Shown: positions 7,251 to 49,518 of the stretch, in pieces
Layout of the letters: each line of letters starts with the position of its first letter
Position numbering within the stretch: position 1 is the stretch's first letter
Source: Mytilus edulis
Lineage: Eukaryota
Assembly (NCBI RefSeq): GCF_963676685.1
Contig: NC_092355.1
Coordinates: 10,912,001-10,976,000 of the forward strand
DNA length: 64,000 nt
Reading direction: 5' to 3'
Notes under the pieces: model-generated
Databases searched by the model: none
What the model was told of the DNA's origin: nothing
The model's input: the letters and a program-made list of their open reading frames with translations, nothing else
Made by a program: the position numbers and the translations under genes

Positions 7251-7969
7251 TTGGAAGAACAATGGTCCGGATTTCGCAGTATGAGTATTTCTTTATATAT
7301 ATATATATACCAACTTCATGTTTATGGAAGGAATTTATATAGATCACAATTGTGCTCATCAATAGAAAATTTTATTTTCACAACTTTGATTGAACAAAAC
7401 AGTTTCGCTCCTTTTTGAAATCATTGCGATTCCAAACATGTGTGTTTATTTATTTAGTGTAATCCTTATTCGATATTTCAGATTAGAACATCGATAAACT
7501 ACACTTGTCTATGTAAGACATTCGTGTCCTTGTTACTTATCTAGAATTTAATTCCAGTCATATTTAATAATCCGTTCTTAAAATAGACACGATCGCTTCT
7601 TTGATGTCGTGTATCCCCGTCTCATTACATCATAATAAAGCCTTTACTGGATATAAAATCAAAATAAATTGAGCAATATCATTAGATCCATGCATCTCTT
7701 AAACTATTAATTTATCAAGATTAAAGATGTGAATATAGTAAAAAGAGATTTCAAAGTTGAACTAATCGTATTTGACATCAGAAATACGAATTTTTAAAAC
7801 ATACAATTTTTTTTTCATGAATTATGCATAATACAGCGATCCCAGAAATATAAAATTACTTCGTATTCATTGATCTATCTTGTAATGGAAAGAGTTCTCA
7901 ATGACAATCATACAACATTTTGTTAATATTTCTTCTTGATAAGACAAGAGAAAGATGCCGAAGTTGATT

Positions 7970-8001
7970 TATAAGAGACGTAAAGCGCCTTGTGGATCAC
8001 T
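7970..8001 (+). promoter_or_regulatory. Candidate core promoter paralog (TATAAGAG + TCACT)
   Basis: Homologous to 34483; TATA at 7970, Inr A at 7999; GTAAGA donor downstream at 8172. Confidence 0.4.
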
Positions 8002-11825: not shown

Positions 11826-11829
11826 TAAC

Positions 11830-13830: not shown

Positions 13831-15321
13831 ATAGTTCTCTGTTACTAATGGGCAAAGTTCATGATAGATATAATTGTAAGAAGCAAAATCGTTCAGTAAA
13901 GTAAGAACTTCAAACACATCACCATGACCAAAATACAATTTTGTCATGAATCCATGTGTGTCCTTTGTTTAATATGCACATAGACCAAGGTGAGCGACAC
14001 AGGCTCTTTAGAGCCTCTAGTTTATATATATATATATATATAAAAGTAATTTTTTTATCATCAGTGCAAGCAGTAGCGTTTGTTTGATTTTAAAACACGA
14101 ATCGATCTATACTATTTAAAATTACAATACGCAAGCTGAAACCGTACCAAGTGATTATTATTTTTGCACACGACATATAGGCTGTCGTCCCACCTCTAAC
14201 AGTAGACGGTTCTCTTGGTGGGGATATTGTGCATTCAACCGTGGATATGATAAAATATCTGTAATAAACAAAATTGTAATGTTTTGATTGTGTAATGTCT
14301 TAATTTTTAAGGTTACGCGGGTTCGGTATTAAGCGGGACAATTGGTATGAACACATTTCGATATACGTGTAAATTATATTAAAAGAAGCTTTCAAACGCA
14401 GTTATTTTCGAGGATATTTAAAGATACAAATAAAAAAATCCTTTTTATGTTTTTGAATTAGGCTTTTAATTTCCATTCCTAATTATATATCATTGTAGAA
14501 AAAATTTATTTTATACATTTAAAGTACATGTAATTCTTTATGCTAGCTAGTCCATGAATAAAATTGCATAAATCACAAAAACACATTCGGGAATAGCAAG
14601 AAAGTTTACCAAAAAAGTAGTGGGAACTTTACTGTTTTTTTTATCATATATATTTCTGATAGTTTTCCCGACCTATTCACCTATTTTCAAACTTGAAAAG
14701 GGACCCCTTTCAGCGGCACGAGCCTGGAACATGTACACATGACAGTTGTAAGTAACAGCTATATAAATATACAAGAGAAGATATGGTATGATTGCGAATG
14801 AGACAAATGTCCACAAGAGACCAAAATTACACAGACATTAACAACTATATGTCACCGTACGGCCGTCAACAATGAGCAAAGCACATACCGCATAGTCAGC
14901 TATAAAATGCATTTCAAAGATACTATAATTAGAATAAAAGGTTAACGTACTTACAAAATATGTCATCTTAAAGAATGTGATTTCACAAATAAATTATTTT
15001 CAAATTCGCAGTCCAAGTCAACCTAAAATCGGTTACACACATTTTTAATGTTATAAATCCATTCCAACAATATTATTTTAAACACACACTAGCTTGCCTT
15101 TTCATTAATTTGAATAATACAAATTCAGCTAAATTTTGTTTATTCCCATCAACAGAGAAATCTCACACTCATCCCAGACGTTAATAATACTCATGCACTT
15201 CAATTTTGATAAACAATTTATTGATACGGACGAAAACGCTTTAACATACGGTTACATTAGGGTTAAAAAAAATGTGAACTTGTTTTTAATTGAATTCAAA
15301 GATAGATTAAACGGTAGCTTT

Positions 15322-26200: not shown

Positions 26201-29200
26201 TTCTACTCACCAATTGCAATTTCCAGCTCAGCTTATATTGTACTATAGTTTCCTTCTACCATGTCAACGATTTTGTGTAAAATAAGTTAGCTATTAGAAG
26301 CGCTGACACTGCCGACACACATATGCGACATGAATGCAACAAAAATAAAGAGGGTACGGTAACGTTAAATCGTTTACGGGCGAAGAATTATTTTCCGTTT
26401 TTAATTAAACTTGTCAGATTTGATTAATTATCGTCGAAAAATGTCCCTAATGGATAGTCATTCAAATTAAACCAGCTTTATTATGCTGTATGCATGTAAT
26501 ATATATGTAACCTGGTCTTTAAATGTACTTTAAGTACAGTGTCTGACGTATTTATAAACATTTTCTTGATTATTTATCCTATTTCAAATATTAATTTGAA
26601 TGAATTTATAAGCCTTTTTCTGCTATAATATTCAAACTTTATTTTTTAACGAAGGCTTCTGGTATGTAGTTTTTTTTACAAAAGGCCCTCGAATTATAGA
26701 CACATTAAAAAATAAAGATGGAAAGTCAAACGCATGAGTCTGGCAAAAATAAAGTTAACGGACAATCATGTCATGACAATAAACGGAAAACGATAAAAGA
26801 CAGAGTTATATCTATATATTTTTTTCCCTTCCTCAAATTTACTCAAATGCAATTTATATAGGTAACATAAAAAGATAAATGATAATGCATTCATTTACAA
26901 TATTTAAAAATAGTTACATCTTAAATTTAATTTAACATATTAAGATCACGTTTTCAAGTGTTCACGGCCGACATCCGTGATTATTAAATAAGGGTGTAAA
27001 AATGAATGACAAATTCTTCACCACGTACGGCAGTTTGTAATTGCATATAAAACGTATTGCAATCAGTTGTAAACCATTAAATATAAAGGTTCAGGTGCTT
27101 ATATTCAATAATCAAATATTATTTCGGCAATCTGTTGATTTTTTTTAGTCAATTCGCGGCGATTTGTGCAGCAGTATGACTTTGAGCTACTTTTTTTATT
27201 TATATAATTATAAAACAGTGTTAAATAATTAAATAGGAAGAAGTTAGAATTCAAATTGAATATTTGTTTTATTTAAATAACATGATTAAGGGGACGTGGT
27301 AGACTTTCAGTTAAAAAATCGTCTTCTTTCACAGTTTTATTTTATTCTTGAAAGGGGAGCAACCCCTGATAAATAATGGGAAAGTTTCACTCGTTTTGTG
27401 TCCAAATTATTAAAATCTGAACACGACTGGACACGGTCTGACAACATCTTGATGTCAGTTTGTATCCATGGTCTGTTTTGGTCTGACACGGTCTTAACGG
27501 ATCTAAACAGCTCGCTAGAAGATACAGTCTTAAATATCTTGACATGCCTTAACGGGACTAATTTACCTAATGAGACTATCGATCCGAATGGAGACTTAAC
27601 GAACTGACAAATCTTGACGTTTTCCTCTAGCGGTAAATCCAGTCAATTAAGATACGATCAGACCAAAATGACCGTTTCAGACTGAAATCGTGCTACTAGT
27701 GTATTGAATACATTTACGTCCTTTCAACTATAAATAGTTATTACACTACACATTTGTGTTCCGTATAATAAAGTTAGTTTATCCTTTTAAAAAGCGTAAC
27801 GAAATAACACACAATTATATGGAGTTGTTTTCTGTCAAAACGATAGACCCTCCTTTTGAAAAAAAAAAATAAGAAAGAATAAACCGGACGATACCATGTT
27901 TCAATGAAAATTTATTCAAGACAACAGAATGGAATAAAAGTGCGGTCGATAAAATAAGATGCCAACTCTGCAAATGATTGAAGTTTAAAACAATCGCAAA
28001 TAGCATAACCGCATGAGTGTACAGTACTAATGAAAGATGACGAATAATTTTGAAATGAATACTTTTGGATAACTAATTGACCATTAAAAGCACCATGTTC
28101 ATTTTTATAAACAGGTAATAGTTATACTGTCATCAGCGTAGTAATATAGATCTAAGTATTGCTTTCATCAATAATTAGATTTAAAATGGGATATTTTAGA
28201 CATTTCCTTTTATGTGTTTATCATCCTAAAAAAATCGTGATTCATTTCCCAATAATTGTAAAAACAAGTTTTTGTATCTGATGTTGTATTTTAAACTAAA
28301 TATCCCTAGTATAACATAATATGCACGTTCATATTGATATCAAAGAGAAATACATTTTCATGTTCAATGATATATACATAATCAAAAGCTCGAATGACTT
28401 GTAGTTTAACTCCGTTTATTATCCTTTTTTCCTTTTGTTGAAATTGTGTTGTAGTCCTCTGAAATGTTAATTTAGTAATGTTGTTATGTACTTGTAACTG
28501 CATTTCATTCTTATTATTTGTATCGATTTAAGTGTGAAGAAATGTTTATACACGACTCAACTTATAGGTAAGATGTTAAGTTGCAAGACAACAATTATAT
28601 CCCATATTTAAATCGCCTTGTACTTATCTTTTATTAACATTAAAGTATTGGTAGAAAGTAATAAGAACATGGAAGACCTATAGCAATGGCAATGTTATAT
28701 ATTAGTATATCTAACAGACACTCTTTTTTATTAGTGTTAGAGATTAGTAGTATGAGTTAGGCCACGCATTACATGACGCGATAAAAAGATTCTTTTCAAA
28801 GTTTTACGATGTGTTCTACGTTATTCTCTTACCATAAAACACGACCTGTGAGAACAGACGTTGACAGTGATACAATATATTCGGGACTTTAATGTCAGGC
28901 AACCCAACGTCATTAACAACAAAAGACATATAGTTGTCTATATACAGTACTGAATACGCTCGATTGTGATAATATAACATGTAGAGAGCGAACATTGTTT
29001 CTAAATGAACGAAAATCAAATCATGACCGTGTTTTTAATATGTGAAAAAATACACAGTTCAGTACCCGCCATTCTGATTTCTTCTTTAAGATGTTATGCT
29101 TATTATTTGTATCTCAATTACATTTCGTGTTGCGTAATCTTTAGTTTTCCATGTTGTCTCGTGTTTTTTGATTTTTTTGTTTGTCTTTTTTATTGTTTAG

Positions 29201-30453
29201 CCATGGCGTTGTCAGTTTATTTTCGATCTATGAGTTTGACTGTGCCTCTGGTAACAGTCAGTGACATTACTTACAATGTTCATTAGATTAGTATACTGAT
29301 ATTAATATGTTGTTAAAAATCGTATAGTACAACTTCCATATATATGGGTGAGGGATAATTTTTTGTTTTTCGTTCATTTTTTAAATAAGTTAGGCCGTTA
29401 GTTTTCTCGTTTGAATTGTTTTATATTGTCATAATATAAGACCAGTGACACAACTAACAATCCTCATATACTTATTATATAAATACTAGTCTTGTTAGAC
29501 ATTATATAATACAACTTCATATAGAGATGGGGATTATTTTGTTCTTTTGTTTGGCGTCTTTGTGCTATCACATTGCAGTATATATATAGCATTTCTTCAT
29601 CTTCAATAATTGAATCATAAAACACTTACTGTAACTGATGGTAATATCTACCTATTTCTATATAAGTGGCACAGTATGATTAATCTATTGGTTTGTAATT
29701 TAACAGCAAATTATTACTTTTGTAATGGAACGTTTGAACCCCATCAATAATGGTTTATCTTGTTCGTACATAGTAAATTAATAATAAAAGGAAGTGACTT
29801 CTTTCTCTAATATAACAGCACAGTAGTATCCGACGTCATTGAGGACAAACGCTGTAAAAATAAAACAACATAAATGAAGACGTTTCATCCCAAATTGATA
29901 TCCTACGTCATATTCAAACTCATAAAAATGCCAGGGTTATAATATGTTCTGATCGATTCAGGTTTCATATAGATTAGAATCATAAGGAGAATTTAAATCA
30001 ACACACATGGAACGTCGTATTATTATTATATGAATTTAAAAGCAAGGAGGGCGTTCCATTTCATGTTGCGACGGTTTGTAATGATTTGATTATAATATGT
30101 TTTACAATTCCAGTGTTTAGCTTGAATTTTATCATGTGTAGTATGGTTAAACCGAATAACATATTCTTTTGGTTGACGCATTTTATATTTAAGGATCGGA
30201 GACATACAAAGGCTCACTTGTGTAACAACTTTATTTAATGAGAACTGACGCGGTAAACGCAATCTGTTTGCGATATTTGGGATATCTCTAAAACCATTTG
30301 TGAGTGAAATTGATCATCGATTGAACAATTTTAAGCCAACAATTCAACTTTTTGAATTTACATGGGACAACAGATCTTTAATAAATACATGCTACAAGTA
30401 ACAGATGTAATACACAGATCTTTGGGAAACTCGTATTCTAATGAATCACCTAA

Positions 30454-30730
30454 AACGTAAAATCGCAAAAATACTGAACTTAGAGGAAAATCAATTCGGA
30501 AAGTCCATAATCACATGGCAAAATCAATTAACAAAACGCACCAAAAACGAATTGACAAGAACTGTCATATTCCTGACTTGGTAGAGGCATTTTTAAATGT
30601 AAAAAATGGTTGATTAAACCTGATTTTCTAGCGCTAACCCTCTCACTTTGACAGTCTCATCAAATTTCGTTTTATTTACATTGATGCGTTAACTAAACAG
30701 ACACAATAAATAAAATAGTCAAAATAGTTA
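30454..30730 (+). repeat. Dispersed repeat (AAAATACTGAACT..GAGGAAAAT..CGGAAAGTCC family)
   Basis: Related copies at ~40670-40830 and inverted at ~38035-38095. Confidence 0.7.
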
Positions 30731-31615
30731 AAACAAAATTGAAAAAATCAGATGTCATATGCATTCTCTAAGGTATACAACCTTTTTAGATTGTATTGTT
30801 TCCAATAAGCCCTATATAAGTACAAATGACGTAGACACGAATGCTAGCGCTCTAATGATTTATTTGATCCTCGACTGATAACATCATATCATTAAAAAAC
30901 CTCCAACTTGCATTACAACAAAGTGGATTTCGCAGTATGAGTATTTCTTTATTTATAAACCAACTTTATGTTTAAGAAATGAATTCATCAATATCACAAT
31001 GTTGCACATCAATAGAATACTTTATTTTCACAACTTTGATTGAACAAAACAGTTTCGCTCCTGTTTGGAGTCATTGCGATTCCAAACATTTGTGTTTATT
31101 TATTTAGTGTAATCCTTATTCGATATTTCAGATTAGAACATCGATAAACTACATTTGTCTATGTAAGACATTCGTATCCTTGTTACTTATCTAGAATTCC
31201 AGTCATATTTAATAATCCGTTCTTGAAATAGACACGATCGCTTCTTTGATGTCGTTTATCCCCGTCTTATTACATCATAATAAAGCCTTTACTGGATATA
31301 AAATCGAAATAAATTGAGCATTATCATTAGATCCATGCATGTCTTAAACTATTAATTTATCAAGATTAAAGATTTGAATATAGTAAAGAGAGATTTCAAA
31401 GTTTAACTAATGGTATTTGACATCAGAAATACGAATTTTTAAAACATACTAATTTTTTTTTCATGAATTATGCATAATACAGCTACCCCAGAAATATAAA
31501 ATTACTTCGTATTCATTGACTTATTTTGTATAAGAAAGAGTTCTCAGTGACAATCATACAACATTTTGTTAATATTTCTTCTTGATAAGACAACAGAAAG
31601 ATACCGAAGTTGATT

Positions 31616-31647
31616 TATAAGAGACGTAAAGCGCCTTGTGGATCACT
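31616..31647 (+). promoter_or_regulatory. Candidate core promoter paralog (TATAAGAG + TCACT)
   Basis: TATA at 31616, Inr A at 31645; GTAAGA donor at 31811. Confidence 0.4.
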
Positions 31648-34482
31648 GATCTGAGAAGTACATATGTTTTACATTACTATCTTTAATCAATTCAATTCAT
31701 AGTCTTTGATCCTTGGGTGGATTGTTTTTAATCAATAACAATATTTTTTTTATGTTGTGTTCTCGTGTTATATTTTATAGAAAAAAACAATTTACGATTT
31801 TACCTATTGTGTAAGATGTAAAGTTGCAAAAAAACAAATTTATCACATTTTTTATTCGCCTTTTATTTATCCCTCGTTGACATATAGTGTAATTGTGGTA
31901 AGTAATGCGTAATATGGATTAACCTATAGCAATGAAAATGTTTTATATTGGTATGTCTTGCAGACACTGTTTTTAATTACTGTTAGGAAATAGTAAAATT
32001 GACTCGGCTATAGCATCAACACGCATTAAATGACGCGATAAAAGATGTTTTTGAAAGATTTACGTGTTTTTCTCAATTATTCTCTTACCATAAAACACGA
32101 TCAGTGCGAATACTCGTGGACAATGATACTATATACTCCTCACTTTATTATAAGGCAACGACATGTTATTGGAAAGTTTTTAACTACTGAGCACGCGGAA
32201 AACAAATTATTATAAGAAATAATTTCTTGGATTTTTTAAGGATTTTAAAAACAGACAAACATATTGAATCAGAAAACCTCTTTTATCATGTGATATTGTT
32301 ACAATATTATCAAGCTGATTTTCAAGAATTTATCATTCACTTTGTCTAATTTAACAAATTTAAGAGACTGTTGTCAAGTGATTTTTTTTCGTTTATTCAA
32401 GTCAATCAATTCGTTGTGTAGTTGGTTTGTCATCAACGAGTATGTTCGTATTAACGTTTACAATTTTTCATTTCGATTATAAATAGTTACTTTACTACAT
32501 AGTTTTTTCTTTATAATAACATATCTGTATCAATTCAAAAGATGAGAAGATATTGCGCATTTTTCATCGTAATTGAAAATTATAACGTGTGTTAAAATGG
32601 TGTTTCATAAATTAAAAAAAAAAGAGTAGATTTGTCTCTTTTCACGTTTATCAAACAATATATTGCATGATACAACAGTATGCGGTAGCAATTATTGTCA
32701 TATCTCTGATGCATATATCAGTCTACGCAATTTCAATCTAAATGATAATAATGGATACCGATTCCCTGCGTATCAGCTGATTATGATTAATCCAGTTTTT
32801 TTTACAGTTGAGCAGTTCTTTCTATTAACTTGTATTATCATGCGGAAAGATCATTAAGACCTTCACGATAACGGTTCATTTAAAGTTGTTATGTTTTATA
32901 TTCCGATCAAACACGTATTTGAAAATGGTAAATACAAATGTACTAAGTATTGATGAAATATGGAATAGGTTTACATCCATTATTGAATACATTTACGTCC
33001 TTTCTACTATAAATAGTTATTACACTACATATTTGTGTTCCGAATAATAAAGTAATTTTATCCTTTTAAAAAGCTTGAAGACATAACACACAATTATATG
33101 GAGTTGTTTTCTGTCAAAACGATAGACCCTCCTTTTGAAAAATAAAAAAAAATAAGAAAGATTAAACCCGACGATACCATGTTTCAATGAAAATTTATTC
33201 AAGACAACAGAATGGAATAAAAGTGCGGTCGATGGAATAAGATGCCAATTCGGCAAATCATCGAAGAACATAGTACTTTTTAACGGTATAAACATGTAAA
33301 GTAGATTTAGAAATTAGCGTTTTTATTATTATGAATAATGCGGTTTATAGTCGCAACAATTCATACACGCATTTTGAAATTTATGATATGAATAAGACAA
33401 GATTTTGTTTTCTATATTGCAATATTACTCGAAAATAAAAAAAATGCAATAAGAAATGCACGCAATAATTTCAATATTTTCAGACCTAAGGTTGACATGA
33501 TTACGCATAGAAAGACCTAACTAAGATCGGCCTTTTGTTTGATATATACTGACACCCATGGGGATGTTCTTTGACAAGACACACCTTAAATAATGCAATA
33601 TCTGTAGCTTAATCGCAATTGAAAATAAAAACTGGAAACAAAATGTTCCTTCTTACAAAAATTACTGAAGAAGATTAATCTCTTTCCTCATTAATCAGAC
33701 AATATGTCACCTGATACCACAATGTGCAGTATCAATTGCTGTCATATCTTTTGTGCATAAAACCAGACTATGCAAGTCCAATATAAATGATATTATTAGA
33801 TATCAATTCCGTGTCTATAAGCTGATTATGATTAATCCTTTTTGTGACATTTCAACAGTTCTTTCTATTAACTTGTATTATCATGCGGAAAGATCATTCA
33901 GACATTTGTGATAACGGTTTACTTAAATTAGCAATATATCATATTCTGATCAAAACATATTTTCAAATTGTTATCACAAAAGTATTGGTGAAATATGGAA
34001 TAGGATACACGATAAGACTAAGTAATACAATACACTTTAATATGGGACAATATTTGTTTGTACATATAAACTAAGTGTCTAAAAGAATTGCACAAAAGCC
34101 AAACGGAGCTACACATATTCTTGAAAAAAATTAGTCCGTTTTAAGTTCCTTGGCAGATTAAACCCTATGATAATTTCCAATTAAAAACAAAAGCCCTGTT
34201 AATTTTTTTTAAGAACAGACGGAAAACTAAATGATAAAAATACAAACACAAAATGGGGATGCAACGCATTTGCTCTTTTCAAAATATAAAACTAAATATA
34301 ATATATATATATAAATTATTATTGGTTGAATACATATAATATAAAGCTTTTAAATAATCAAAGCATTTTAGTTTTACACAATAAACTTTAATGTGAATAA
34401 TCTGTATGCATCATTTGATTAAACATAGGTCGATTTTTGCGGAGGAAAATTCTTTATAGTTATATTGATTAACTCATTTCTT

Positions 34483-34514
34483 TATAAGAGACGTAAAACG
34501 TCTTGTTGATCATT
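34483..34514 (+). promoter_or_regulatory. Candidate core promoter (TATAAGAG + Inr-like TCATT) of cassette A
   Basis: TATAAG at 34483 and the A of TCA at 34512 are 29 nt apart; the same spacing holds in paralogs at 7970, 31616 and 41254. Confidence 0.5.
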
Positions 34515-34908
34515 GATCTGAGCACTGCATATGTTTTAACGTCATTGGCTTTAATGAATTGAATCTATAGCCTTTTATCTAGTAACTCAGCCCGTGGAAT
34601 TAAAGTTTGAATACATAACAACATTTATCGCACGCTGTTTTCTCCAGTTGTATTTCATAGTAAATGAGTATTCTTTTAAAAAAAAGTTGAGAAAACTTAT
34701 GGAACTATGAAAAATCTGAGTTATATTTTTTGATAGACATTTATGTGATAATATATGGAATATTTAATACCAATAGTCCTATTACTGGGAATATGGCACT
34801 AAGTAATACATTAAATAATCAGATATTTGTCTTTTTATCGATACCAGTGAATAAATAAAATTGTGTTACAACTATTCATTATCGTTGAATAATATTTCGA
34901 AACAAAAG

Positions 34909-34968
34909 ATGGATGTCGGAGATACTTATATTCGTGATTTTCTAAATGACTTCATAAATGATATAAAG
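34909..34968 (+). CDS. Candidate alternative first coding segment A of the GPCR (MDVGDTYIRDFLNDFINDIK)
   Basis: ATG in AAAAGATGG context, 20 open codons, ends at AAG|GTAAGG in phase 0, matching the phase-0 acceptor at 48421. Paralogous to 41678-41737 with no indels. Confidence 0.65.
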
Positions 34969-35563
34969 GTAAGGAGATGTTTAAACAATGAATATCTTAT
35001 ATATGATAGCGTAGAACATTACTAGAACACATTTGTAAGTATGTTTTTTAAAAGAATCAAAATTGTCTAATTGATAAAATTTACAATTGCTGTAAAAAAC
35101 GTCAAATACAATTACCTGTACAACGTAAGAAACACAATGTGATTGAATCTTTAGCATCAACAAGCTGTGTATAGTGGTAAAATAAGGACTACGCAATTCA
35201 AAGATCCATTTCATAGATTTATGTTTTTGTCTCACTCATTATATTACCATGAAACACGACCAAAGAAAAACGTCATGTGTTGTGATACTTTTAAAATACT
35301 CTTGATTTAATTGTAAATTTTGAGAAATCAATATACTTTTTTAAAAGTGTTGACCCTTTTTTCTGTCAATTTGACATTGTACTTATTGAGTGTTGTTTAC
35401 TTATAAGCATGTTACAAAACGTTAAATTTTTCGAAAATCTAAGGAATTTCTTATCCCAGGAATAGATTATCTTAGCCATTTTTGACACAACTTTTTGGAA
35501 TTTTTGGGTCATCAATGCTCTTCAACTGTGTACTTGTTTGGCTTTAAAACTATTTTGATCTAC

Positions 35564-35607
35564 GCGTCACTGATGAGTTTTATGTAGACGAAACGCGCGT
35601 CTGGTAT
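35564..35607 (+). ncRNA. Minimal type I hammerhead ribozyme motif in a Penelope/retrozyme-like repeat (~35420-35650)
   Basis: GCGTCA-CTGATGA-GTTT[TATGT]AGAC-GAAA-CGCGC-GTC-TGGT: intact catalytic core, 4-bp stem II, palindromic stem III, weakened stem I. Confidence 0.7.
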
Positions 35608-38600
35608 ATTAGATAATAATCCTGGTACTTTTGATAACTATTTCTACTGGATACATGTTGAGTGATTTATTATTTGAATACGAAACAGTAAGTTCTTTAA
35701 GCATCTCATTGCTGTTGACCGTTTTAATATCAATTATTTATTTATTTTGTTTTATCATATGTCCGTTTTATTGTAACTTATGTCATCAACCACATGATGA
35801 GGACTACACATTTGTTTAATTCAACCATGAATGAAACGAGTATTCAATCCTTTTTTCTTCTCTTTAGTCATTTATTAATTTCAATTGTCATTTTTTTTGT
35901 TATTCCTGAAGTCTTGAAAATAAATCAATGATAAGATATCTTGAATAAGAACTGTTTGTCATATTTCATTTTAATAAACATAAAGTTATGCTCATGATTA
36001 GGACGTTGATATTCGCGCCAAAAAAAATGGAGCCTATTATTCCATGAATTTTCGTTTATTTATGAAAATCATAGTTTGAGCTTTTAAGTTGTTTTGTCAT
36101 GATAGTTATCAAACGTACCAGGCTGATAACTTGATACGCCAGACGCGTGTCTTCATAAGACTCATGAACCAGACCGCTCGTTTGACATTTTGATGTTAAC
36201 ACTCATTGTTGAGTATTTGACAGTGAACTGCAGTTGAATTCATCTTCACCATTTGTAGATTTGACTGTGAATTGTTATCATACCACATCGCCTCGTTGTT
36301 TTATGAAAACGTATATTTAGCATTTAAAAGGATTTGAAGTTTTTACATATAATTTATAATTATTGAAAATTCAAATGAGAAGCAATATATTTCCTAATTA
36401 AAAAGAAAACAAAAGAAGTTGTTTTTCTTTGGTCAATAATGAAAAAAAGTCACTGATCCAAGAAAGTGCAGTAGCAATTAATTTCACATCTTTACCGCAT
36501 AAAACAGATTCTGTATCATTCTATCATTTTAATGATATCGTTGGAATATCATTTCCCAGTCTATAAGCTTGTTATGATTAATCCATTTCATTTGACATTT
36601 GAACAGTTATTTCTATTAATTTGAATTATCATGCGGAAAGATCAATTATACCTGTGCAATAATGGTTCATTTAAATTTACTTTCTAATAGTAAATGTATG
36701 AAATTTCAAATGTCGATCAAAGAAATATTTTGAAATTGTTATTACAAATGAACTCGGTATTTAAGAAATGTGGAACAAGGTATTTTATTCCACCACCAAC
36801 ATTCGTAATAATGTAAAAATCAACTATATTTCCTCACCGAAAATTACCACTTTGCTATTTTCTTGTGTTTTGCAATTTAGATGTTTAGTATCAAGTTGAC
36901 CTAAGCATGCTATTATAAAAACACATATTCTGTGTATGATTTCCATGTAGTTTTATTTGAGGTCAGCGAAATTGTATGACGTCTAAACTTTGGTGAAATA
37001 TTTGTACCTTCTAGCCTCTAATATGACTTTGTTCTTATCAAAATACTGTCTTTCAGGATAATCTCGTGCAATTATCTTGTAAGTGGGTCTTCTAAATTCT
37101 TTTAAATTGTAACTTGTCTAATAAGGGGTTAGACACTCGAAAGCAATTTAATTAAGAAAGCTTTTCTAGGCCGATTTTTCCAATGTTTTATACAAATAAA
37201 TTGTTCTTTTTCGTTACCTGTGCCCTAATTTCTGACCATAGCCTTCACATGTTTATACCATTCAATACAATATTGGTAACACGAATTATATATATAGAGA
37301 TCAATACTATTTACTGTTTTCATTGTGTTTGATTGCTATATACTATCATGGCAAATCAAATTATATGCAATATATAATGTTTAATAGGCTATTTTTGTTT
37401 GAATGTCCTTATTTTCCATATGTCCAGAAAGTTTTTAGTATATAAATAAGAAGATGTGGTATAATTGCCAATGAGACATCTCTCCACAGGAGACCAAATG
37501 ACACAGAAATTAACAACTTTATGTCACATTACGGTCGAATGTTTACAAACCCTTTTTTCCTACGCTTTTGAGGCAATTTTATAAAACAAAAATGAGACGA
37601 AAGACAAATTATTTTTATTTGATTTCGTATATCAGGCCAAATGTTGGAAAAATATGTGACATTGACCTCCTTTTTAATATTATTAGTAAGCAGGTTGTTG
37701 CCATGGATACACCAAAAAGGAATATATTGAACCATTCAACTACTGGGTATCAGATATGTTGAAAATACTGATTACATACATATGCACATATATGATACAA
37801 ACAGTAGGCTTTTAAAATTAGTAAGAAGGCAAAAAAGAGGGATGGTAAAATTTATGTATATTGCTATCTAACATTAGTACTTATTTAGTGACAAAATCCA
37901 TGTGGTTGTGCTTTTTTCAAGAAAAGAGCAGTAAAACTCCCATTACAAATCAGCGTCCTGCTTTACATTTTAGGAAGTTTTTATAACCATGGAGGTCCTC
38001 TTTGTTGAGCTTCTGCAAATCTCTCACACAATTTTGCCATTTGATTAGGGACTTTCCGTTTTAAATTTTCCTCGGAGTGCAGTATTTTTCTGATTACAAT
38101 TTATACTGCCCACACAGTGGTCGGCGTGTCAGCCACTGCATCATCTAGATTCTGGAAACCCTCTGCTGTCTACCCTTTTTGTTTCTTTTCTATGTTCTCT
38201 CTATGTATACAAGCTCCGTTTCTATGTTCTCTATATGTATACAAGCTCCGTCACAGCTATCAACCTGTCTACCTGAGCTCTAACCACCTTGCAAAATAAT
38301 CCAACTGCTTTATTTCTATGTGGATACATAAAATGTAAAATTGTTCTTCGAAATTCTGTGAACTACTAAATCTAACCAAATAAACGGAGAATGTGTCCAT
38401 ATGGGATACAGATAATGCCCCAGCTTGCATATAACGCTAAAAAAAGTCATTACACAAGAACGATAAAAATGACGTCACTCAAATTCGCACTGGATTTATG
38501 TTTTATGGTATTAAGCATTGTGTATACGTTTCAAAGAATTTAATAGAGGCAAAATAAAATTCGAGAACGGAAACTAATTGTTGGGACGTACTGTACGTAT

Positions 38601-38699
38601 ACGTACTGACGGACGGACAAGGGTAACACTGTTTGCCTCCTGCTCCGCCACAGCGGATGATATAAAAAAATCAGATGTTTTTATATTAAAATTGTACAT

Positions 38700-39033
38700 A
38701 CTCGACTATCCCTACGACCCTTGTATGATACAGTCGATCTGGTCTTGCCAAGATCAGACTGAGATCGAGTATAGTTGATTTGGTCTAGCTAGTCGAGTAA
38801 AGATCGTGTAGAGATCATGAATTGGTCGGAATCATCGAATATTTATTCAATTAGTGGTCGAATTGGAGACGTGATGGAGTCATCAAGAAGTCGTGAATGG
38901 TCGAGTGAAGTTTGTGTACAGTCGGATAGCAGTCGGGAAGAAGTCAAAAACAGGCCCGATCAAGAATTTGGTCGTTGAAATGTGGACAATCGGGATCATC
39001 GAGTTGATCTGATCGCCAGTGTGAACCTAGCTT
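38700..39033. mobile_element. Fragment of a DNA transposon, possibly PIF/Harbinger-like
   Basis: CG/GATC-rich island ending in GCCAGTGTGAACCTAGC; only one terminus is recognisable. Similar single termini near 17895 and 52870. Confidence 0.45.
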
Positions 39034-41253
39034 TATAGAACATCGATTTCTATCATTTATTTCTTTAATTAAGCTGTGCGCGTTTTGGTGATGGCACGTC
39101 ATCAGGAATGATACAATTCATTGGGATATACATGTTGATTTACGTATGACGCGCACATTTTGTTATCCAATCCTAAAAACGGATTCTTCTAAAACATACA
39201 TGTAATGTTATCATTCATTTTTGAAAATATTTACCTCATTTTGACTATAAATAGTTATTACACTTAGTCTACATCTTTGTATTATTTATATGTAACGTAT
39301 CTTTATCAAGGCTCTATCTTATTGCGCATATTTTATTGCAATTATAAATTATAATTGGAAGCATGATATTTCCTATTTAAGAAAATACTTAAGAAGATTT
39401 ATCTCGTTCCTCATCAATCAGTAAATATGTCGCATGATACCACAATGCATATGGGAAGTATCAATTATTGTCTAACCTCTGGTGAATATCAACAGTCTAC
39501 GTAATTCCAATATATGAATGATATAACTGGATATCTACTCACTGTCTATAAGCTGATTCTGATTAATCCAGTTTTGTTCTTTTAAAATTTCTATTATCTT
39601 GTAGTATCATGCATAAACATCATTAAGACTTTTGTGATACCGGTTCACTGCAATTTACTTTATCGTCGTACATTATACTGTTTCAAATGCAAATTCAAGA
39701 TTTGTTATAACATATGAACACAGTGTTTTGATGAAATATGGAATGAAGATGTGACCACATATACTCTCAAATACGAGCAAAATATATTACTTGGAATATA
39801 CAATATGAGAGGAAAAGCTAAAAGAATCACATGTATGCCCATCGGAGCGAAACTTTTGACAGGGAAAGCCTATAATGGTATATACACACATATATGGTAT
39901 GACGGCCAATTTCCAAACTTTCCATTGGAGAGCAAAACAAGTAGATGTTAATACTATAGACCACCGTGCGATCACCCATATCTACATAGAAGCGATACAA
40001 GCACAGCCAACACAATAATATACTAGACGTCGATCAACGTAGCCAGAAATCAATTGAAGATACATATGTCATTAGATGTTCATGTTTTTCAACTTGACAG
40101 AGCGTTTTGGTTGGTGATCTGAGTATGCATATAATAATTGTAATCGTAGAAATGACAAATATACGCTCCAGTGACTTTAAGCATTGCCAGTAATTCATTA
40201 ATTTGCATATGAAATTTATATTTACTGAAATCTTCTGCAGCACTTCTGGTTTCTTTTTTTTTAACAAATAAGGTTTATGTTTATAATATACTTGTACATT
40301 GTAAGCGCAACATAGTTCATTTTATATCGCTAAAAAAATAACAGGATTAAATGCCTTTTCGAAGAAATTTATTAGTTTATAGACTGGATCAACTTATTTT
40401 GATCTCAACATCAAAGTTTGTTGCACATGATCATGTTTCATAAGTTTGTTTTATTGAATACAAGAGAGATACGTTTACTGAATCAACTATTTCAAATGAA
40501 AAACGATCGCAAATAAGTTATGTTACTACTGCAAAACTGGAAACCAGAACTTGTTACGCTTTTCTTTCAAATTATAGCATACAAACTAATGTTCGTAAGT
40601 TTAGTTCTGCAATACATAATTGTCCTGTCCATGTTGACCTTTGCAGGTTATTTGATATAAAAAAAAAGTAACATAACAAAGAATAGCAAACCCCATGAAA
40701 AAATCAAAACAGAAAGTCTTTTATCAAATGGCATACTCATTCAGATGACAAAAAAAAAACTATCATATTCCTGATTCAGAACCAGCATTTATTTATGTAC
40801 AATACTGGTTGATTAATTCGGGTTGTATAGCTAAAGAAGAAAAGCAGATTATGTAGATTACATAAATGTTGTATTATCCGTCTACGAAAACAAATACATT
40901 TCGTGTTTTAATTCCTTGGCAGTTTAAACCCTTTTAGAGGATATTGTTTTCGAATTAAAAAAAAAAGGTTTGAGAAATGTAATATAAGGCGGAGAAGTAA
41001 ATGAAATAAAAATACAAACACAAAACAGACACTCAACGCATTTGTTCTTTATTAATTAAAGCTCAATATATATATTATCAGCATTGTTTTAATACATATA
41101 TCATGTATATAGAGCCAAAAAATATATTCTATGGCATTGAAGTTGTAAACAAAACAACTTTGAAGTGACTAATTTGTATGCATCTATTATTACACAAAGG
41201 TCGATTATAGCGGATGCAGATTACATATAGTTATATTGATTAGCTCTTTTCGT

Positions 41254-41285
41254 TATAAGAGATGTGAAACGTATTGTCGATCATC
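41254..41285 (+). promoter_or_regulatory. Candidate core promoter (TATAAGAG + Inr-like TCATC) of cassette B
   Basis: TATAAG at 41254, TCA adenine at 41283 (29 nt). Confidence 0.5.
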
Positions 41286-41677
41286 GATCTGAGTACTACA
41301 TATGTTTTAACGTTATTGGCTTTAACTAATTGAATCTATAGCCTTTTATATGGTTACATAGCCTGTGGATTACATTTGAATAACTTACCACATTTAACTA
41401 ATGTTGGTTTCTCAAATTGTATTCCAGGGTAAATGAGTATTCTTATTTGTGGTAAAAAAAAAGTTAAGGAAACACATTGAACTATGAAAAATCTAATGTA
41501 TATCTTTTGATAAATATAAATTTGAAAATACATGAAATATTTAATATCAAAAGTCCTCTTAATGGGAATACGGAACTAACAAACATACTGAAACATCGTC
41601 TTTTTATCGAAACTAGTGAATAAATAAAATTGTGCTACGACTATTTATAAACCTTGAATATTAATTCGAAACAAAAC

Positions 41678-41737
41678 ATGGATAACGGAGACTATTATAT
41701 CCGTGATTTTCTGAATGACTTCATAAAGGATATAAAG
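41678..41737 (+). CDS. Candidate alternative first coding segment B of the GPCR (MDNGDYYIRDFLNDFIKDIK)
   Basis: ATG in AAAACATGG context, 20 open codons, AAG|GTAAGG phase-0 donor. 52/60 nt and 17/20 aa identical to segment A; 3 of the 6 changed codons are synonymous. Confidence 0.7.
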
Positions 41738-42849
41738 GTAAGGAGTTCTTTGAACCACTTATAATTTAAATAATCATGATGATATGATTAATGTCTAGCA
41801 AACTAGAAAACTTGTGACATTTTTTTTTCTCTAAAAAAATCAAAATTGTACAATTGATAAAGTTACAAAATAATGTTATGCCATTAGAACATACATGACA
41901 GTGAAGTTTTTAAAAGCATTAAAATTGTATAACTGATGAATTTAGGAAAAAATATCTATCATTCTAAGATTAAAGTAAAATTACCAAATGGTACAAACAG
42001 TTATTAGTATTATAAGAAAACGTATAGACCATATTTTCATGTTGATCTGTCACACTGAATTCTACATTTACGATGTTATAAGGGATGAAAGCTAAAACAA
42101 GACAAATATCCTTTGTGTATATTTCAATGTTACCTATAAGTGAAAATGGATCGCAGAAACACAACGGAGAAACATCTGTGTTAACATAATGTGTTACATT
42201 GCAATACTGACGTATTTGTCATAGTTTGTTTGTACAAAAACATATATACAAATAGTGTGCATATGCGCGGAATTGTGTTCTTTTTTTAAAGTCTATAATA
42301 AAGTAAAATGCAAAATATATTTAGAGATATGTGTTGTTTTTTTTCTCCAAAATGTCGTACTTGTGAGAATTGTGTACAGATAAAAAATAACGGATAATGG
42401 TCAACATTAACAATATTTCTTTACCACAATTGACCCACTTTGATAGTCTGTTAAATTTGTTTAGACTTGTTGACGTTCAGTTTTAAGCGTACCTTACAAT
42501 GATATATAGAGAAAATAAATTTTGTAAATAAACGGACTGCATATAAAATGTTTTATATGTCAATACTAATGTACTAATGTTTTCTTTTAATATGTCATTA
42601 AAAACGTAATCGTTAAGTGCAGTGATAAATGTGGTTCAATTATATTGCTCATTTACTCTATGATACCAAAATTAGTGATAATTTACAAAACAAATGTCAC
42701 CACAAAATAAGACTAAACCTGCGGTTCACAATATAAAAAAACGTCTTTGTTGAAATAACTACTAAAAATCATTATCTGTGTAGGAAGACTATTTGTTATA
42801 ATTAACATATCAGCAGGTTAAGAACTGTTCAATATTTATAAAAAAAAAA

Positions 42850-46464: not shown

Positions 46465-46815
46465 AGTTTCGGTGTGGTAGTCAGCGCATCGGAATAATAT
46501 CCCAAAGGTTCCTGGTTTGATCCCCGTTCCGGGGAGAAAAATTCAGAGACTGTCAATTTTTTGGTTCTGCATTGACATCATTTGCGAGTATGGTCTTAAG
46601 AAACGATAATAGTCAATCAAAGGGGGCGATAAATGGCTGACCTCTGTTAAGAGAGAGCAATATATCTTGCATGTAAAAGACACCCTTGTAGATTTCTAAA
46701 AAGAGCAGGCTTATGCCGCTACAAGGCAGCAATCGCACTCGTACAGTGGAAAGGGGAATATATAAGTTGTAATAACTTGTTTCCAAATCCAATATAAATA
46801 AATATGTTTAAACTA
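46465..46815 (+). mobile_element. tRNA-derived SINE
   Basis: A-box-like GGTGTGGTAGT and B-box-like GGTTTGATCCC at tRNA spacing, ~350-bp body, AT-rich tail. Confidence 0.7.
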
Positions 46816-48420
46816 ATAAACACATAATAAGACTAGTGATATGAAAGCCATCGTTCAGTTATTTAAATTAACTAAGTAAGAAGACTGGGGTTCAGGGGTT
46901 TTCCAATTTTTTATTTATCCCATTTGCTGAGATAAAACCTGATTGAATTGCATAAACGCCAAATGCTACGAGGTCACCTCTGAACAGGGAACTCATGGTA
47001 TGCGTGCATCGTTAAGTAAACAACAATCAATCGGTAATTTTCAATATCATACAAACTGCCTAACAGTATTAAATATCGAATACATTACCTCTCACCAGAT
47101 ACTCGTATTTTTTTCAAATGGAATGAAATTCAAAATACCACATGCCTCTTCATAACGATACTATAAAATATAATTTGTCTTACTATTTTTGAATTACATC
47201 GGGTTTAGTGCATCATGTGTGCATTATAGAATGTCTACTGGCAAGACGGTTTTCCTTTAAATCTAAAAGAATAGACGTGTAGAACGGCAATTCAATTTTC
47301 CATAAATGTCACTTCATATATGCAATTGACACTTATTGCCAATAATACATTCAATTTCACTAGACAAATTAACTTACATCTTTCGTTCAATCAATTTTGA
47401 TGATACTGTCGGTGATATAATGATATTTGGAGTGAGATTTAACGCTTAAGTTCAAAGGTGCATATAGTTGAGGCTTATTCGTGTTTAAAGTTCTAGTGTT
47501 GTTCATTCCACGTTTGCAATACTTCCAGAGTGTTCAAATTAACAACAACACATTCGCAGTTTAATATATTATGAAATTAAACTAACATACACATGCAATG
47601 TCATTTTACGATAAGTTAAATGTAAAGAAAATGTACAATTATACAGAAATAGAAGAAAATCGCCATTGCGTCCCACTAGATTTCTAACTTACTAGCCCGT
47701 TATTAATATCTCTTTTATTTGCTGGTGATTAAGATTAAAACACAATTATGACTACTGTACTATATTTTTTGACATTTTAAACTATATTGTGTCTGTTTGT
47801 TTTGTTTACATATCGTTATCAATATAGCATAACGTTATGCGACTTTCATACAAGTGGGAGGTTTGGCTATATAAACAGATTTATTCCAACATTGTCTACA
47901 TAAGAAAATGCATGTACCAAATCAGGTATATGACAGTTGTTTTCAAATTGTTTGATATGTTTACGTTTTTAATTTTGCTAATGATTATTGATTTTTTTTC
48001 GGCGTTCGATATTACTGTGAATGTACTTTTAACTTTGTTTAATACACAATTATACGGTGTACTGATTTACAGATGCACTGCATTTTATAAAAGAACTAGT
48101 AAGGGTAACTTATCGCCTTTTTGTTTGTTTGCTTTTTTTAAAGGGGGATAAATGTTTTTTTTTCTCGGATTGGAAAAGAGGGACAGTGTGTGGGTATCAA
48201 TTGAATTATCAAAAGTTCATGAATATAAACAGCTTCTTTTTCAGTTTTATCCAAGGCTCCTTGTTGAAGACAGTTATTTGACCTGTAATGGTTACGATTA
48301 CAAATTGTGACTTGGATTGGGAGTTGTCTTTTTTGCACTCATACCACACTGATATCTATATATTTTCATTAACATACTTATAAATTGTAAAGTGATTAAT
48401 GTGTATGTTATCTATTTCAG

Positions 48421-49518
48421 ATAAACCAATCCAAACATCTATCATGTGGAAATGGTTCAAATCAAACATGTGATGACCAGTGGATAACCAATCGAGGCTC
48501 TGGTCAGGGGTCAATTGGGTCAGATGTATTCACATATGTCACCCCAGTGATATTTGCTGTAGGAATAATCGGGAATACAATTTCCTTATTAGTGTTTCTT
48601 ACTAAAAACATGAGGAAGTTGTCGGCAAGCGTATATCTGGCAGCCCTATCAACAGCTGATCTAATGGCTTTGATATTTTATGTCCTGGTTGAGTGGATTA
48701 GAAAAGGAATACCAATCGGGTCAGGACAGGTAACAGCTCCGTTTCTGGAAAGTAATGGAGTATGTCAGATAATACTGTTCATGTCGTATTCTTTTCGTTT
48801 CCTTTCGGCTTGGCTTGTAGCATGTTTTACATTAGAACGATATGTCGGAGTCTGTCACCCGTTGAAACGCAAGGACGTCTGTAACTTACGTTCTTCAAAA
48901 AGAATCGTTTTCTTTGCAGTGATTATTTCCTTTGTTATAGCCTCATTCCGACCATGGCTGAGCGAAGTGCGTTATGTAGGGCCAAATGATGTTCCATCGT
49001 GTACTAGAAGACTTGAACACACATACCTCTCATTTGTCTATGACTGTATTTTTGGAGTATGTATCACCTTTCTACCATTTCTTATTATCACAATACTAAA
49101 TACATTAATCATTCGGAAATTAATTATTCGGAACAAAAGACACCGACAGGTCAAAATTATAACAGAGGAAAGTATAATTCGATTAGAATTTACCGTAATT
49201 TTGATAACTATATCATTTTGCTTCATCGCTTTCAATACGCCATATGCCATTATATGGTTCAAACATTCTCTACAGATGAGTTCTATGCGAATGGAGGATA
49301 GTGTATTCGTACCAACAAATCAAAACTTATTGATTTTTACAAAGACAATATTTTTTATGAATTATTGTATTAACTTTTTCCTGTACAGTATAACAGGTGC
49401 TTACTTCCGAAAAGAACTCAACATGTTATTTACATATAGAAGTAAAGTTTATCAAAGTTATCACAAATGCTCCCTCCCTAACTCTACAGCAACAACTCCA
49501 CAATCATGGATTCCTTAA
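48421..49518 (+). CDS. Rhodopsin-like (class A) GPCR, FMRFamide/peptide-receptor-like; terminal coding exon holding the extracellular N-terminus and all 7 TM helices
   Basis: ORF 48547-49518 has TM1 GIIGN, TM2 LAALSTADL, TM3 FTLERYVGVCHPLK, TM6 FCFIAFNTP and TM7 INFFLY. The frame stays open back to 48421 (INQSKHLSCGNGSNQTCDDQWITNRGSGQGSIGSDVFTYVTPV, with sequons NQS/NGS/NQT), directly after the acceptor TATCTATTTCAG. There is no in-frame ATG before TM1, so an upstream phase-0 coding exon is needed. Confidence 0.93.
   Translation: MNQSKHLSCGNGSNQTCDDQWITNRGSGQGSIGSDVFTYVTPVIFAVGIIGNTISLLVFLTKNMRKLSASVYLAALSTADLMALIFYVLVEWIRKGIPIGSGQVTAPFLESNGVCQIILFMSYSFRFLSAWLVACFTLERYVGVCHPLKRKDVCNLRSSKRIVFFAVIISFVIASFRPWLSEVRYVGPNDVPSCTRRLEHTYLSFVYDCIFGVCITFLPFLIITILNTLIIRKLIIRNKRHRQVKIITEESIIRLEFTVILITISFCFIAFNTPYAIIWFKHSLQMSSMRMEDSVFVPTNQNLLIFTKTIFFMNYCINFFLYSITGAYFRKELNMLFTYRSKVYQSYHKCSLPNSTATTPQSWIP

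What the first reader, a model, noticed from the sequence alone, without database searches (positions are those of the whole stretch)
34848..41737. Two paralogous 121-nt exons each encoding a 20-aa in-frame N-terminus for the GPCR
34848-34968 and 41617-41737 have the same length and a conserved upstream acceptor (TTTTTATCGATACCAG / TTTTTATCGAAACTAG). Each has an ATG in A-rich context and an AAG|GTAAGG phase-0 donor. The peptides MDVGDTYIRDFLNDFINDIK and MDNGDYYIRDFLNDFIKDIK differ at 8/60 nt with no indels and 3 synonymous changes, while the flanks do contain indels. Either gives a 385-aa receptor when joined to INQSKHL... The peptide is acidic and amphipathic rather than a signal peptide. DTY/DYY could be tyrosine-sulfation sites affecting ligand binding (inference). 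Both are too short for the ORF track.
Basis: partly seen in the sequence, partly recalled or inferred. Interest (0 to 1): 0.8.

Follow-up and report, generated by a model that had tools for sequence, protein, structure and literature searches.

The report
Alternative N-terminal mini-exons of mussel GPCR

Summary
Exons A (34848-34968) and B (41617-41737) are real 121-nt paralogues inside a roughly 2.6-kb tandem duplication. Each has an ATG, 20 codons and an AAG|GTAAGG donor in phase with the one-exon rhodopsin-type GPCR body (48421-49518).

**Exon A** is already annotated: Mytilus edulis RefSeq XP_071141297.1 is the A peptide plus this body. A spliced Logan contig (run X2) joins the A tail to position 48421.

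**Exon B** has no transcript evidence here. It is much better conserved than the adjacent intron or the body's synonymous sites (p 0.15 against 0.38-0.40, no indels). That indicates long-term constraint.

Two more intact homologous mini-exons of a "distal" type lie 64.5 kb (D1) and 52 kb (D2) upstream of the body. A spliced contig (run X1) joins D1 directly to 48421. Paralogous genes nearby carry the same distal and proximal exons.

**Exon A's coding sequence is not native.** A tract of about 490 bp (34886-35372) is 97.5-100% identical to the first exon of paralogue P2, 173 kb away. This is recent gene conversion with P2 as donor.

Still open are whether B is used, whether the upstream AG sites are acceptors, and the tyrosine-sulfation idea. 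It is a new member of a known kind and of moderate interest.

The parts
34848..34968 (+). Mini-exon A (proximal type). It has a 61-nt untranslated part (34848-34908) and a coding part at 34909-34968 (MDVGDTYIRDFLNDFINDIK). The phase-0 donor GT is at 34969.
   Evidence: Sequence. The peptide equals the N-terminus of RefSeq XP_071141297.1. The 771-nt contig of run X2 carries the A tail directly before 48421. That tail occurs only in A and in P2's exon 1 in this genome, and the body head differs from P2 at its third base.
41617..41737 (+). Mini-exon B (proximal type), the same length and layout as A. The coding part is 41678-41737 (MDNGDYYIRDFLNDFIKDIK), with the phase-0 donor GT at 41738. Its use is not shown.
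   Evidence: Sequence. dN/dS against A is 0.29, and the 14-codon core shows 3 synonymous and 0 non-synonymous changes against P3. Exon divergence from P3 is p=0.149 with no gaps, against 0.376 plus gaps in the intron; Fisher p=1.6e-4. No junction contig with B appeared.
48421..49518 (+). Body exon: 365 codons plus a stop, encoding the whole 7TM receptor. The shared acceptor AG is at 48419-48420.
   Evidence: Sequence and translation. Pfam 7tm_1 E=6e-25. Contigs of X1 and X2 stop matching the genome exactly at the acceptor and continue into upstream exon sequence.
32468..35086 (+). Copy 1 of the old tandem duplication that carries exon A: upstream blocks, the exon, and about 120 bp of intron.
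   Evidence: Self-BLAST gives a constant offset of 6767-6768. Alignment. Upstream p-distance between A and B is 0.218.
39236..41868 (+). Copy 2 of the same duplication, carrying exon B.
   Evidence: In the upstream block A and B are sisters: ((A,B),(P2,P3)), support 0.993, informative sites 24:6:6.
34886..35372 (+). Gene-conversion tract: 97.5-100% identical to the first exon and intron start of paralogue P2 (C12:10773693-825, minus strand, 173 kb away). P2 is the inferred donor.
   Evidence: Sliding identity jumps from 0.55-0.87 upstream to 0.95-1.00 (0.80 in one gapped window). The breakpoint lies inside the untranslated part of the exon. Inside the tract there are 26 sites with A=P2=P3 but not B, against 11 with A=P2=B but not P3.
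34430..34610 (+). Conserved non-coding element about 240-420 bp upstream of exon A. It begins with TTTATAAGAG and may be a promoter or regulatory block.
   Evidence: It has only 8 matches in the 1.37-Gb genome, all inside this gene cluster. Its function was not tested.
41201..41379 (+). The same conserved element upstream of exon B, 83% identical to the A copy.
31614..31711 (+). Partial extra copy of the conserved element, with no exon behind it. A second partial copy lies at 7968-8063.

Best explanation
The window holds most of a Mytilus edulis class-A GPCR gene, annotated in RefSeq as 'thyrotropin-releasing hormone receptor-like'. Its whole receptor body is one exon (48421-49518), and its first 20-21 residues come from one of several homologous mini-exons.

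Four intact mini-exons lie upstream on the same strand:
- D1, at C12:10895900-962, 64.5 kb upstream of the body.
- D2, at C12:10908287-349, 52 kb upstream.
- A, 13.5 kb upstream.
- B, 6.7 kb upstream.

Each has an ATG, an open frame encoding a predicted amphipathic helix (core Y-I-R/Q-D-F-L-x-D-F-I-x-x-I-K), and a phase-0 GT donor. One mini-exon at a time is spliced to the single acceptor at 48421. This gives receptors that differ only in the extreme extracellular N-terminus: acidic MDxGDxY in the proximal type, basic MMTK... in the distal type.

Shown here: D1-to-body and A-to-body junctions in RNA-type contigs, the A isoform in RefSeq, and the paralogy and purifying selection of the exon family.

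Inferred:
- B is, or until recently was, a working alternative. It and its upstream block have stayed far more conserved than neutral sequence since an old tandem duplication.
- Each mini-exon probably has its own promoter, as in variable-first-exon arrays. D1 skips the downstream copies, and each copy carries a conserved upstream block with a TATA-like motif.
- The alternative helices may change ligand access, tyrosine sulfation or trafficking. This last point is speculative.

A's coding sequence was recently replaced by gene conversion from paralogue P2. B is therefore the only proximal copy still carrying this gene lineage's own sequence.
For: - Body and family: Pfam 7tm_1.
- RefSeq P0132 equals the A peptide plus the body at 100%.
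- Spliced contigs: X1 (951 nt) aligns to 48420-49312 and has 58 further letters ending ...TTTTCTTAATGACTTCATAAATGAAATTAG. That string is unique to D1 in the genome.
- X2 (771 nt) aligns to 48419-49155 with 34 further letters equal to the A tail. A k-mer chimera with P2 is excluded.
- Eight exon-type sites occur genome-wide at 0-1 mismatch, all within C12 10.56-10.96 Mb. All eight frames are open and followed by GT.
- Pairwise dN/dS is 0.08-0.29 in the pairs with synonymous differences.
- B exon against P3: p=0.149 with no gaps, against intron 0.376 and body synonymous pS 0.40; Fisher p=1.6e-4.
- The upstream element is specific to the cluster.
- Distal-type N-termini are used in other annotated models: M. 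trossulus P0127 and M. edulis P0026.
- The 'MDDGDNY' type, closest to B, heads the annotated orthologues of this gene in M. trossulus and one M. galloprovincialis model.
- AlphaFold predicts a helix at residues 4-21 followed by a disordered linker.
- A dead copy (X5, C12:10863379) with no ATG, an in-frame TAG and no GT shows what an unused copy decays into.
Against: - No transcript containing B or D2 was seen. Only two junction-spanning contigs were available, both from one study, and the runs are only guessed to be RNA.
- The protein collection holds no B isoform, and RefSeq lists a single unnumbered isoform.
- B's intact ATG, frame and donor alone would survive neutral decay with a rough, uncomputed estimate of 15-25% probability, so intactness by itself proves little.
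- B's two variable codons each carry two nucleotide changes, which could mean relaxed constraint.
- Transcription starts were not mapped, so 'own promoter' is inference. The conserved AG with a pyrimidine run before each proximal exon could be a real acceptor.
- Conservation of B could in part reflect an older gene conversion.
Confidence: 0.6

Rival explanations
1. Exon B is an unused relic of the tandem duplication. The gene uses A and D1, and perhaps D2. B merely has not yet collected a disabling mutation, or it was kept similar by past gene conversion.
For: No B junction appears, and no B isoform is in the protein clusters. RefSeq chose A. Gene conversion demonstrably acts on these exons. 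B's codons 3 and 6 each carry double changes.
Against: The B exon is 2.5 times less diverged than its own intron and than the body's synonymous sites, with a sharp drop in identity just past the first 8 intron bases (+9) and no indel in 121 nt. The known conversion tract in A does not respect the exon boundary. Core codons show only synonymous change against P3. The truly dead copy X5 looks very different. Only two informative contigs were examined.
Confidence: 0.3
2. A and B are internal, mutually exclusive cassette exons. A shared non-coding leader exon further upstream would splice to the AG at 34847 or 41616, and the chosen cassette would then splice to the body.
For: They have equal length (121 nt) and equal phase. 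A pyrimidine run plus AG is conserved in A, B, P2 and P3. The 121-nt unit is gap-free while sequence just upstream has indels.
Against: The D1 transcript skips D2, A and B entirely. Joining any upstream coding exon to A or B puts TGA in frame. About 700 bp upstream of each exon is conserved and contains a TATA-like motif, which fits a promoter. No leader exon was found. Neither contig extends far enough 5' to decide.
Confidence: 0.3
3. The conservation of B reflects a non-coding role, for example an intronic enhancer or an alternative promoter fragment for the receptor gene, rather than a coding exon.
For: The whole 700-bp upstream block and the 61-nt untranslated part are conserved about as well as the coding part.
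Against: The reading frame, ATG, Kozak-like context and an 8-nt identical donor are all retained. Changes in the helix core are synonymous only.
Confidence: 0.07

Closest known systems
RefSeq model XP_071141297.1, 'thyrotropin-releasing hormone receptor-like' [Mytilus edulis] (P0132)
   Same: It is identical to the exon A peptide plus the body exon of this window, 385 aa.
   Different: It lists one isoform only. The D1-to-body form seen in run X1, and the possible B and D2 forms, are not in the protein collection.
Variable-first-exon arrays such as clustered protocadherins and UGT1A (from my own knowledge, not tested against literature here)
   Same: Several homologous 5' exons sit in tandem, each with an ATG and a donor. 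Each is spliced one at a time to a common downstream acceptor, and intervening copies are skipped (D1 skips D2, A and B). Each copy has conserved upstream blocks.
   Different: Here the variable part is only a helix of 20-21 residues, not a whole domain. There are four copies over 65 kb. Individual promoters are not demonstrated.
Alternative N-terminal coding exons in vertebrate GPCRs, such as CRF2 receptor alpha/beta/gamma and the OPRM1 exon-11 forms (own knowledge)
   Same: Alternative 5' exons give receptors with different extracellular N-termini on one 7TM body.
   Different: In those genes the alternative exons are, as far as I recall, not clear tandem paralogues of one another. Here they are homologous duplicates under purifying selection.
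Tandem exon duplication as a source of alternative or mutually exclusive splicing (Kondrashov and Koonin 2001; Letunic, Copley and Bork 2002; own knowledge)
   Same: A and B are equal-length, same-phase tandem duplicates. Inclusion of both would break the frame.
   Different: These are start-codon exons, and internal-cassette behaviour is not shown.
Peptide-type class-A GPCRs with solved structures: TRH receptor, neurotensin receptor 1, mu-opioid receptor, ghrelin receptor and GPR139
   Same: The 7TM region aligns with these (best is TRHR 7wkd, E=4e-13, residues 61-256).
   Different: The similarity is weak and confined to the 7TM region; nothing aligns to the N-terminal helix. Automatic names for close homologues disagree (GPR139, TRHR, FMRFamide, neurotensin, chemokine). 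The ligand class is unknown.

Membership tests
Rhodopsin-family (class A) GPCR, Pfam PF00001 | A match to the 7tm_1 profile above the gathering score. | tested here: met
   88.6 bits against a cut-off of 30.5, E=6e-25, profile positions 2-260 of 260.
Rhodopsin-family (class A) GPCR, Pfam PF00001 | E/DRY at the end of TM3 and an NPxxY-type motif in TM7. | tested here: inconclusive
   Read from the translation. ERY is present (TLERYVGV). TM7 reads NFFLY, with F in place of P, and this is conserved across homologues (N338 F339 F340 L341 Y342).
Variable / alternative first-exon array | Several homologous 5' exons in tandem on one strand upstream of a common exon, each with an ATG, an open frame and a donor in the same phase. 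| tested here: met
   D1, D2, A and B are all intact with a phase-0 GT. No other GPCR body lies between them and 48421.
Variable / alternative first-exon array | Each 5' exon is spliced directly to the common acceptor. | tested here: inconclusive
   Met for D1 (run X1) and A (run X2). Not observed for B or D2, and only two junction contigs were available.
Variable / alternative first-exon array | Each 5' exon has its own promoter and transcription start. | not testable with these tools
   Logan contigs cannot show transcript starts. Only conserved upstream blocks with TATA-like motifs were seen.
Mutually exclusive tandem cassette exons | Equal length and phase, clear homology, and a frame break if both are included. 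| tested here: met
   121 against 121 nt, phase 0, 87% identity. A joined to B gives an in-frame TGA.
Mutually exclusive tandem cassette exons | Both exons are internal, meaning a shared upstream exon splices to their acceptors. | not tested
The contigs extend only 34 and 58 nt 5' of the junction.
TRH receptor / GPR139 / FMRFamide-receptor orthology (the database names) | Specific orthology to a receptor with a known ligand. | tested here: inconclusive
   Names given to 90-97% identical proteins disagree. The best solved relative matches at E=4e-13 over TM1-5 only. I do not file this gene under any of these families.

The most novel reading that the evidence does not exclude
A mollusc class-A GPCR family uses a protocadherin-like array of variable first exons, each with its own promoter. 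Each exon encodes nothing but a different 20-21-residue N-terminal helix, acidic and sulfatable in the proximal type and basic in the distal type. Cells would choose among D1, D2, A and B to tune ligand recognition or surface delivery of one 7TM body. The arrangement would be conserved across paralogues and species and kept in step by gene conversion.
Probability: 0.3. Interest if true: 0.55.

Novelty: new member of a known kind. Interest (0 to 1): 0.38.

Why it matters
Mussel genomes hold very large, mostly orphan GPCR families, and their N-termini are often mis-annotated because the first coding exon is tiny and far away. Here the true 5' end of one such gene is shown to be an array of homologous 60-63-nt coding mini-exons spread over 65 kb. 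At least two are used.

The helix they encode shows a related motif, by eye, as far out as scallop homologues, so it is probably functional. That gives a concrete and cheap experiment: express the isoforms and compare trafficking and ligand response.

The case also shows that annotation pipelines miss such isoforms. The locus is a clean example of non-allelic gene conversion overwriting one exon. It does not reveal a new mechanism.

Tried and rejected
- **Orthologous loci.** I could not fetch the loci of M. galloprovincialis, M. trossulus or M. californianus, so the cross-species test of B was not done at the DNA level.
- **Choice of the one read-laying run.** Read laying allows one call of at most 6,000 letters on this genome. 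None of the joints A-to-body (13.5 kb), B-to-body (6.7 kb) or A-to-B (6.65 kb) fits. I laid the acceptor and body and read the loose ends. This identified A and D1, but two of the four runs had no junction contig.
- **Third A/B-type exon.** I looked for one near 31614-31795, where part of the upstream block recurs. No exon is there.
- **Lost receptor body between A and B.** I looked for one as a sign of a collapsed gene pair. None was found.
- **Is the upstream block a transposon?** The 181-nt block has only 8 copies, all in this cluster.
- **k-mer chimera.** I considered that the A-to-body contig could be a chimera with P2 transcripts. I rejected this because the body heads differ at their third base.
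- **Literature.** One search for Mytilus GPCR alternative first exons found nothing relevant.
- **Earlier scan notes.** They hold nothing on this gene.
- **Joined models.** The body exon was searched alone, and the only full-length protein used was the database entry P0132.
Full report
**What is there**

The window is Mytilus edulis chromosome piece C12:10912001-10976000.

- Each has a pyrimidine run plus AG in front.
- Each has 61 nt without an ATG, then an ATG in an A-rich context (A at -3, G at +4).
- Each has 20 codons followed by AAG|GTAAGG.

The coding parts differ at 8 of 60 nt, with 3 synonymous changes, 5 non-synonymous changes and no indel.

The receptor body is one exon. It begins at 48421 behind TATTTCAG and has 365 codons plus a stop at 49516-49518. 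It matches Pfam 7tm_1 at E=6e-25. No in-frame Met lies upstream of TM1 in that exon, so an upstream start exon is required.

**The exon type is real and A is already known**

I searched the body exon alone, and built or searched no joined model. The search found 385-aa RefSeq proteins in M. edulis, M. galloprovincialis, M. trossulus and M. californianus.

XP_071141297.1 of M. edulis (P0132) is the A peptide followed by this body at 100% identity.

Close paralogues and orthologues start with M-D-x-G-D/E-x-Y-I-R-D-F-L-x-D-F-I-K/N-D-I-K. Scallop homologues start MTDEDEFLKKFLNS..., and more distant bivalve homologues also show an acidic amphipathic stretch before the first N-glycosylation and Cys region.

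AlphaFold2 on P0132 with 74 homologues gives a helix at residues 4-21 (pLDDT about 50-55), then a disordered linker at 22-50, then the 7TM bundle. The mini-exon therefore encodes essentially one helix.

**RNA-type evidence**

Twenty runs hold words of the body. Fourteen look like transcriptome assemblies, but they are only guessed to be RNA.

Only one read-laying run of at most 6,000 letters was allowed, and no exon-to-body joint fits in that length. I therefore laid window:46400-49900 and read the loose ends.
- **Run X1.** A 951-nt contig matches 48420-49312 with 3 differences. It carries 58 further letters ending TTTTCTTAATGACTTCATAAATGAAATTAG.
- **Run X2.** A 771-nt contig matches 48419-49155 with 5 differences. 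It carries 34 further letters ending ATTTTCTAAATGACTTCATAAATGATATAA.
- **Intron coverage.** Neither contig continues into the intron. Intron depth is nil apart from three short, high-depth repeat fragments.
- **The X2 tail.** It is the end of exon A. It occurs only in A and in the identical first exon of paralogue P2.
- **Chimera check.** The window's body differs from P2's at its third base, so a k=31 assembly chimera is excluded.
- **The X1 tail.** It is unique in the 1.37-Gb genome. It lies at C12:10895932-961, 64.5 kb upstream of the body on the same strand.
- **Runs X3 and X4.** Neither had a contig reaching the acceptor.
- **Exon B.** It was not seen.

**A larger array**

A degenerate pattern for the exon end finds eight sites at 0-1 mismatch, all within C12 10.56-10.96 Mb. 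Hits at 2 mismatches are at control level.

Four sites are 'proximal type': A, B, and the first exons of paralogues P2 and P3.

Four sites are 'distal type'. These are 21-codon exons reading MMTK(G/R/C)(T/I)S(Y/F)I(Q/P)DFL.(D/Y)FIN.I(K/R), all open and followed by GT:
- P2dist lies 9.4 kb upstream of P2's proximal exon.
- P4dist lies 10.4 kb upstream of the broken body P4.
- D1 (C12:10895900-962) and D2 (C12:10908287-349) lie upstream of this window's gene.

No other receptor body lies between D1 and 48421. D1 and D2 sit in a roughly 12-kb duplicated segment that is 67-79% identical.

Distal-type N-termini are used in annotated models elsewhere: M. trossulus XP_063405703.1 (P0127) and an M. 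edulis model on P4 (P0026).

A fifth proximal-like copy, X5 at C12:10863379, is dead. It has no ATG, an in-frame TAG and GG instead of GT.

**History of A and B**

The duplication is a block of about 2.6 kb (32468-35086 against 39236-41868, constant offset 6767-6768).

In the 630-bp upstream part, A and B are sisters: ((A,B),(P2,P3)), support 0.993, informative sites 24:6:6. They are nevertheless old, with p=0.218.

The bodies of this gene and P2/P3 differ at 40-41% of synonymous sites.

From about 34886, inside the untranslated part of exon A, to 35372, A is 97.5-100% identical to P2. Upstream of that point the identity is 55-87%. Inside this tract 26 sites group A/P2 with P3, against 11 that group them with B. 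This matches the ratio expected if P2 was the donor.

A tree of the bodies places the 'MDDGDNY' N-terminus in the M. trossulus orthologues of this gene and in M. californianus and M. coruscus. The 'MDVGDTY' form is confined to the P2/P3 clade plus this gene in M. edulis and M. galloprovincialis.

My inference is that A's present coding sequence is imported. B (MDNGDYY) is one nucleotide per codon away from MDDGDNY and descends from this lineage's own exon.

**Is B constrained?**

All mini-exon pairs that have synonymous differences give dN/dS of 0.08-0.29.

B against P3:
- The exon shows p=0.149 over 121 nt with no gap.
- The 8 nt after the donor are identical.
- The next 114 nt of intron show p=0.376 plus 28 gap columns. 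Fisher p=1.6e-4.
- Against the body's synonymous rate of 0.40, the binomial probability is 2e-9.
- In the 14-codon helix core, B differs from P3 by 3 synonymous and 0 non-synonymous changes.

Two cautions apply. Intactness alone is weak evidence; my rough, uncomputed estimate is a 15-25% chance under neutrality. Past gene conversion could also mimic constraint. However, the one conversion tract seen here runs 400 bp into the intron, whereas B's conservation stops just past the donor.

**Mechanism**

The best reading is an array of alternative start exons, spliced one at a time to 48421. D1 and A are shown to be used. B is probably used, and D2 possibly.

Joining any upstream coding exon to A or B would put TGA in frame. 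The D1 transcript skips D2, A and B.

Each proximal exon has a conserved, cluster-specific upstream block. Each distal exon has a TATATA-like motif about 95 nt before its ATG. This fits separate promoters, but transcript starts could not be mapped from contigs.

The functional consequence is inference only. The proximal helices are acidic around Tyr7 and the distal ones are basic at the tip.

**Limits**

- Only two junction contigs were available, both from one study, and the runs are labelled RNA only by guess.
- D1 and D2 lie outside the window, so they are given in genome coordinates.

**Verdict**

The A isoform is already annotated. The D1 isoform, the four-exon array, the constraint on B and the P2-to-A conversion are new details of a known kind of gene architecture.

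Noticed in passing
window 2093-9308 plus 27702-27983, against 27983-33266: A recent tandem duplication of a segment of about 5.3 kb upstream of exon A, 91-93% identical. The second copy is the empty site.
   Followed up: partly
window 4695-7151 (+): An 818-aa open frame that looks by eye like a reverse transcriptase of a non-LTR retrotransposon. It lies inside the first copy of that duplication and is absent from the second. It was not scanned against Pfam.
   Followed up: no
window 11829-13862: A tandem array with a period of about 500 bp, 88-92% identical, inside the large inserted element.
   Followed up: no
window 34430-34610, 41201-41379, 31614-31711, 7968-8063; also C12:10774052, 10566694, 10731579, 10777880: A non-coding element that starts TTTATAAGAGACG. 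It occurs only 8 times in the genome, always inside this GPCR cluster. One full copy lies 240-420 bp upstream of each proximal exon, and partial copies lie between the distal and proximal exons. It is a candidate promoter or enhancer.
   Followed up: partly
C12:10722670-10723878 (minus strand), locus L012: Paralogue P4 is a broken receptor body. It is split by an insert of about 146 bp that is 94% identical to window 30452-30599 (MITE-like), and it carries a TAA. Its distal mini-exon, 10.4 kb upstream, is still intact.
   Followed up: partly
C12:10863379-10863493 (+), locus L005: A dead proximal-type mini-exon copy 97 kb upstream of the body, with no ATG, an in-frame TAG and a lost donor. Fragments of a receptor body lie at C12:10836438-10836980.
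   Followed up: partly
window 46634-46867, 47804-48037, 48272-48388: Short intronic pieces covered at high depth by 31-50-nt contigs with 2-3 mismatches in all four runs. These are probably fragments of expressed repeats, not exons of this gene.
   Followed up: no
window 62815-63573 (-): A 252-aa open frame of unknown nature near the window's end. It was not examined.
   Followed up: no
body exon, TM7 (protein residues 338-342 of P0132): The NPxxY motif reads NFFLY, with F in place of P, and this is nearly invariant across 74 mollusc and other homologues. It is an unusual feature of this orphan receptor family.
   Followed up: no
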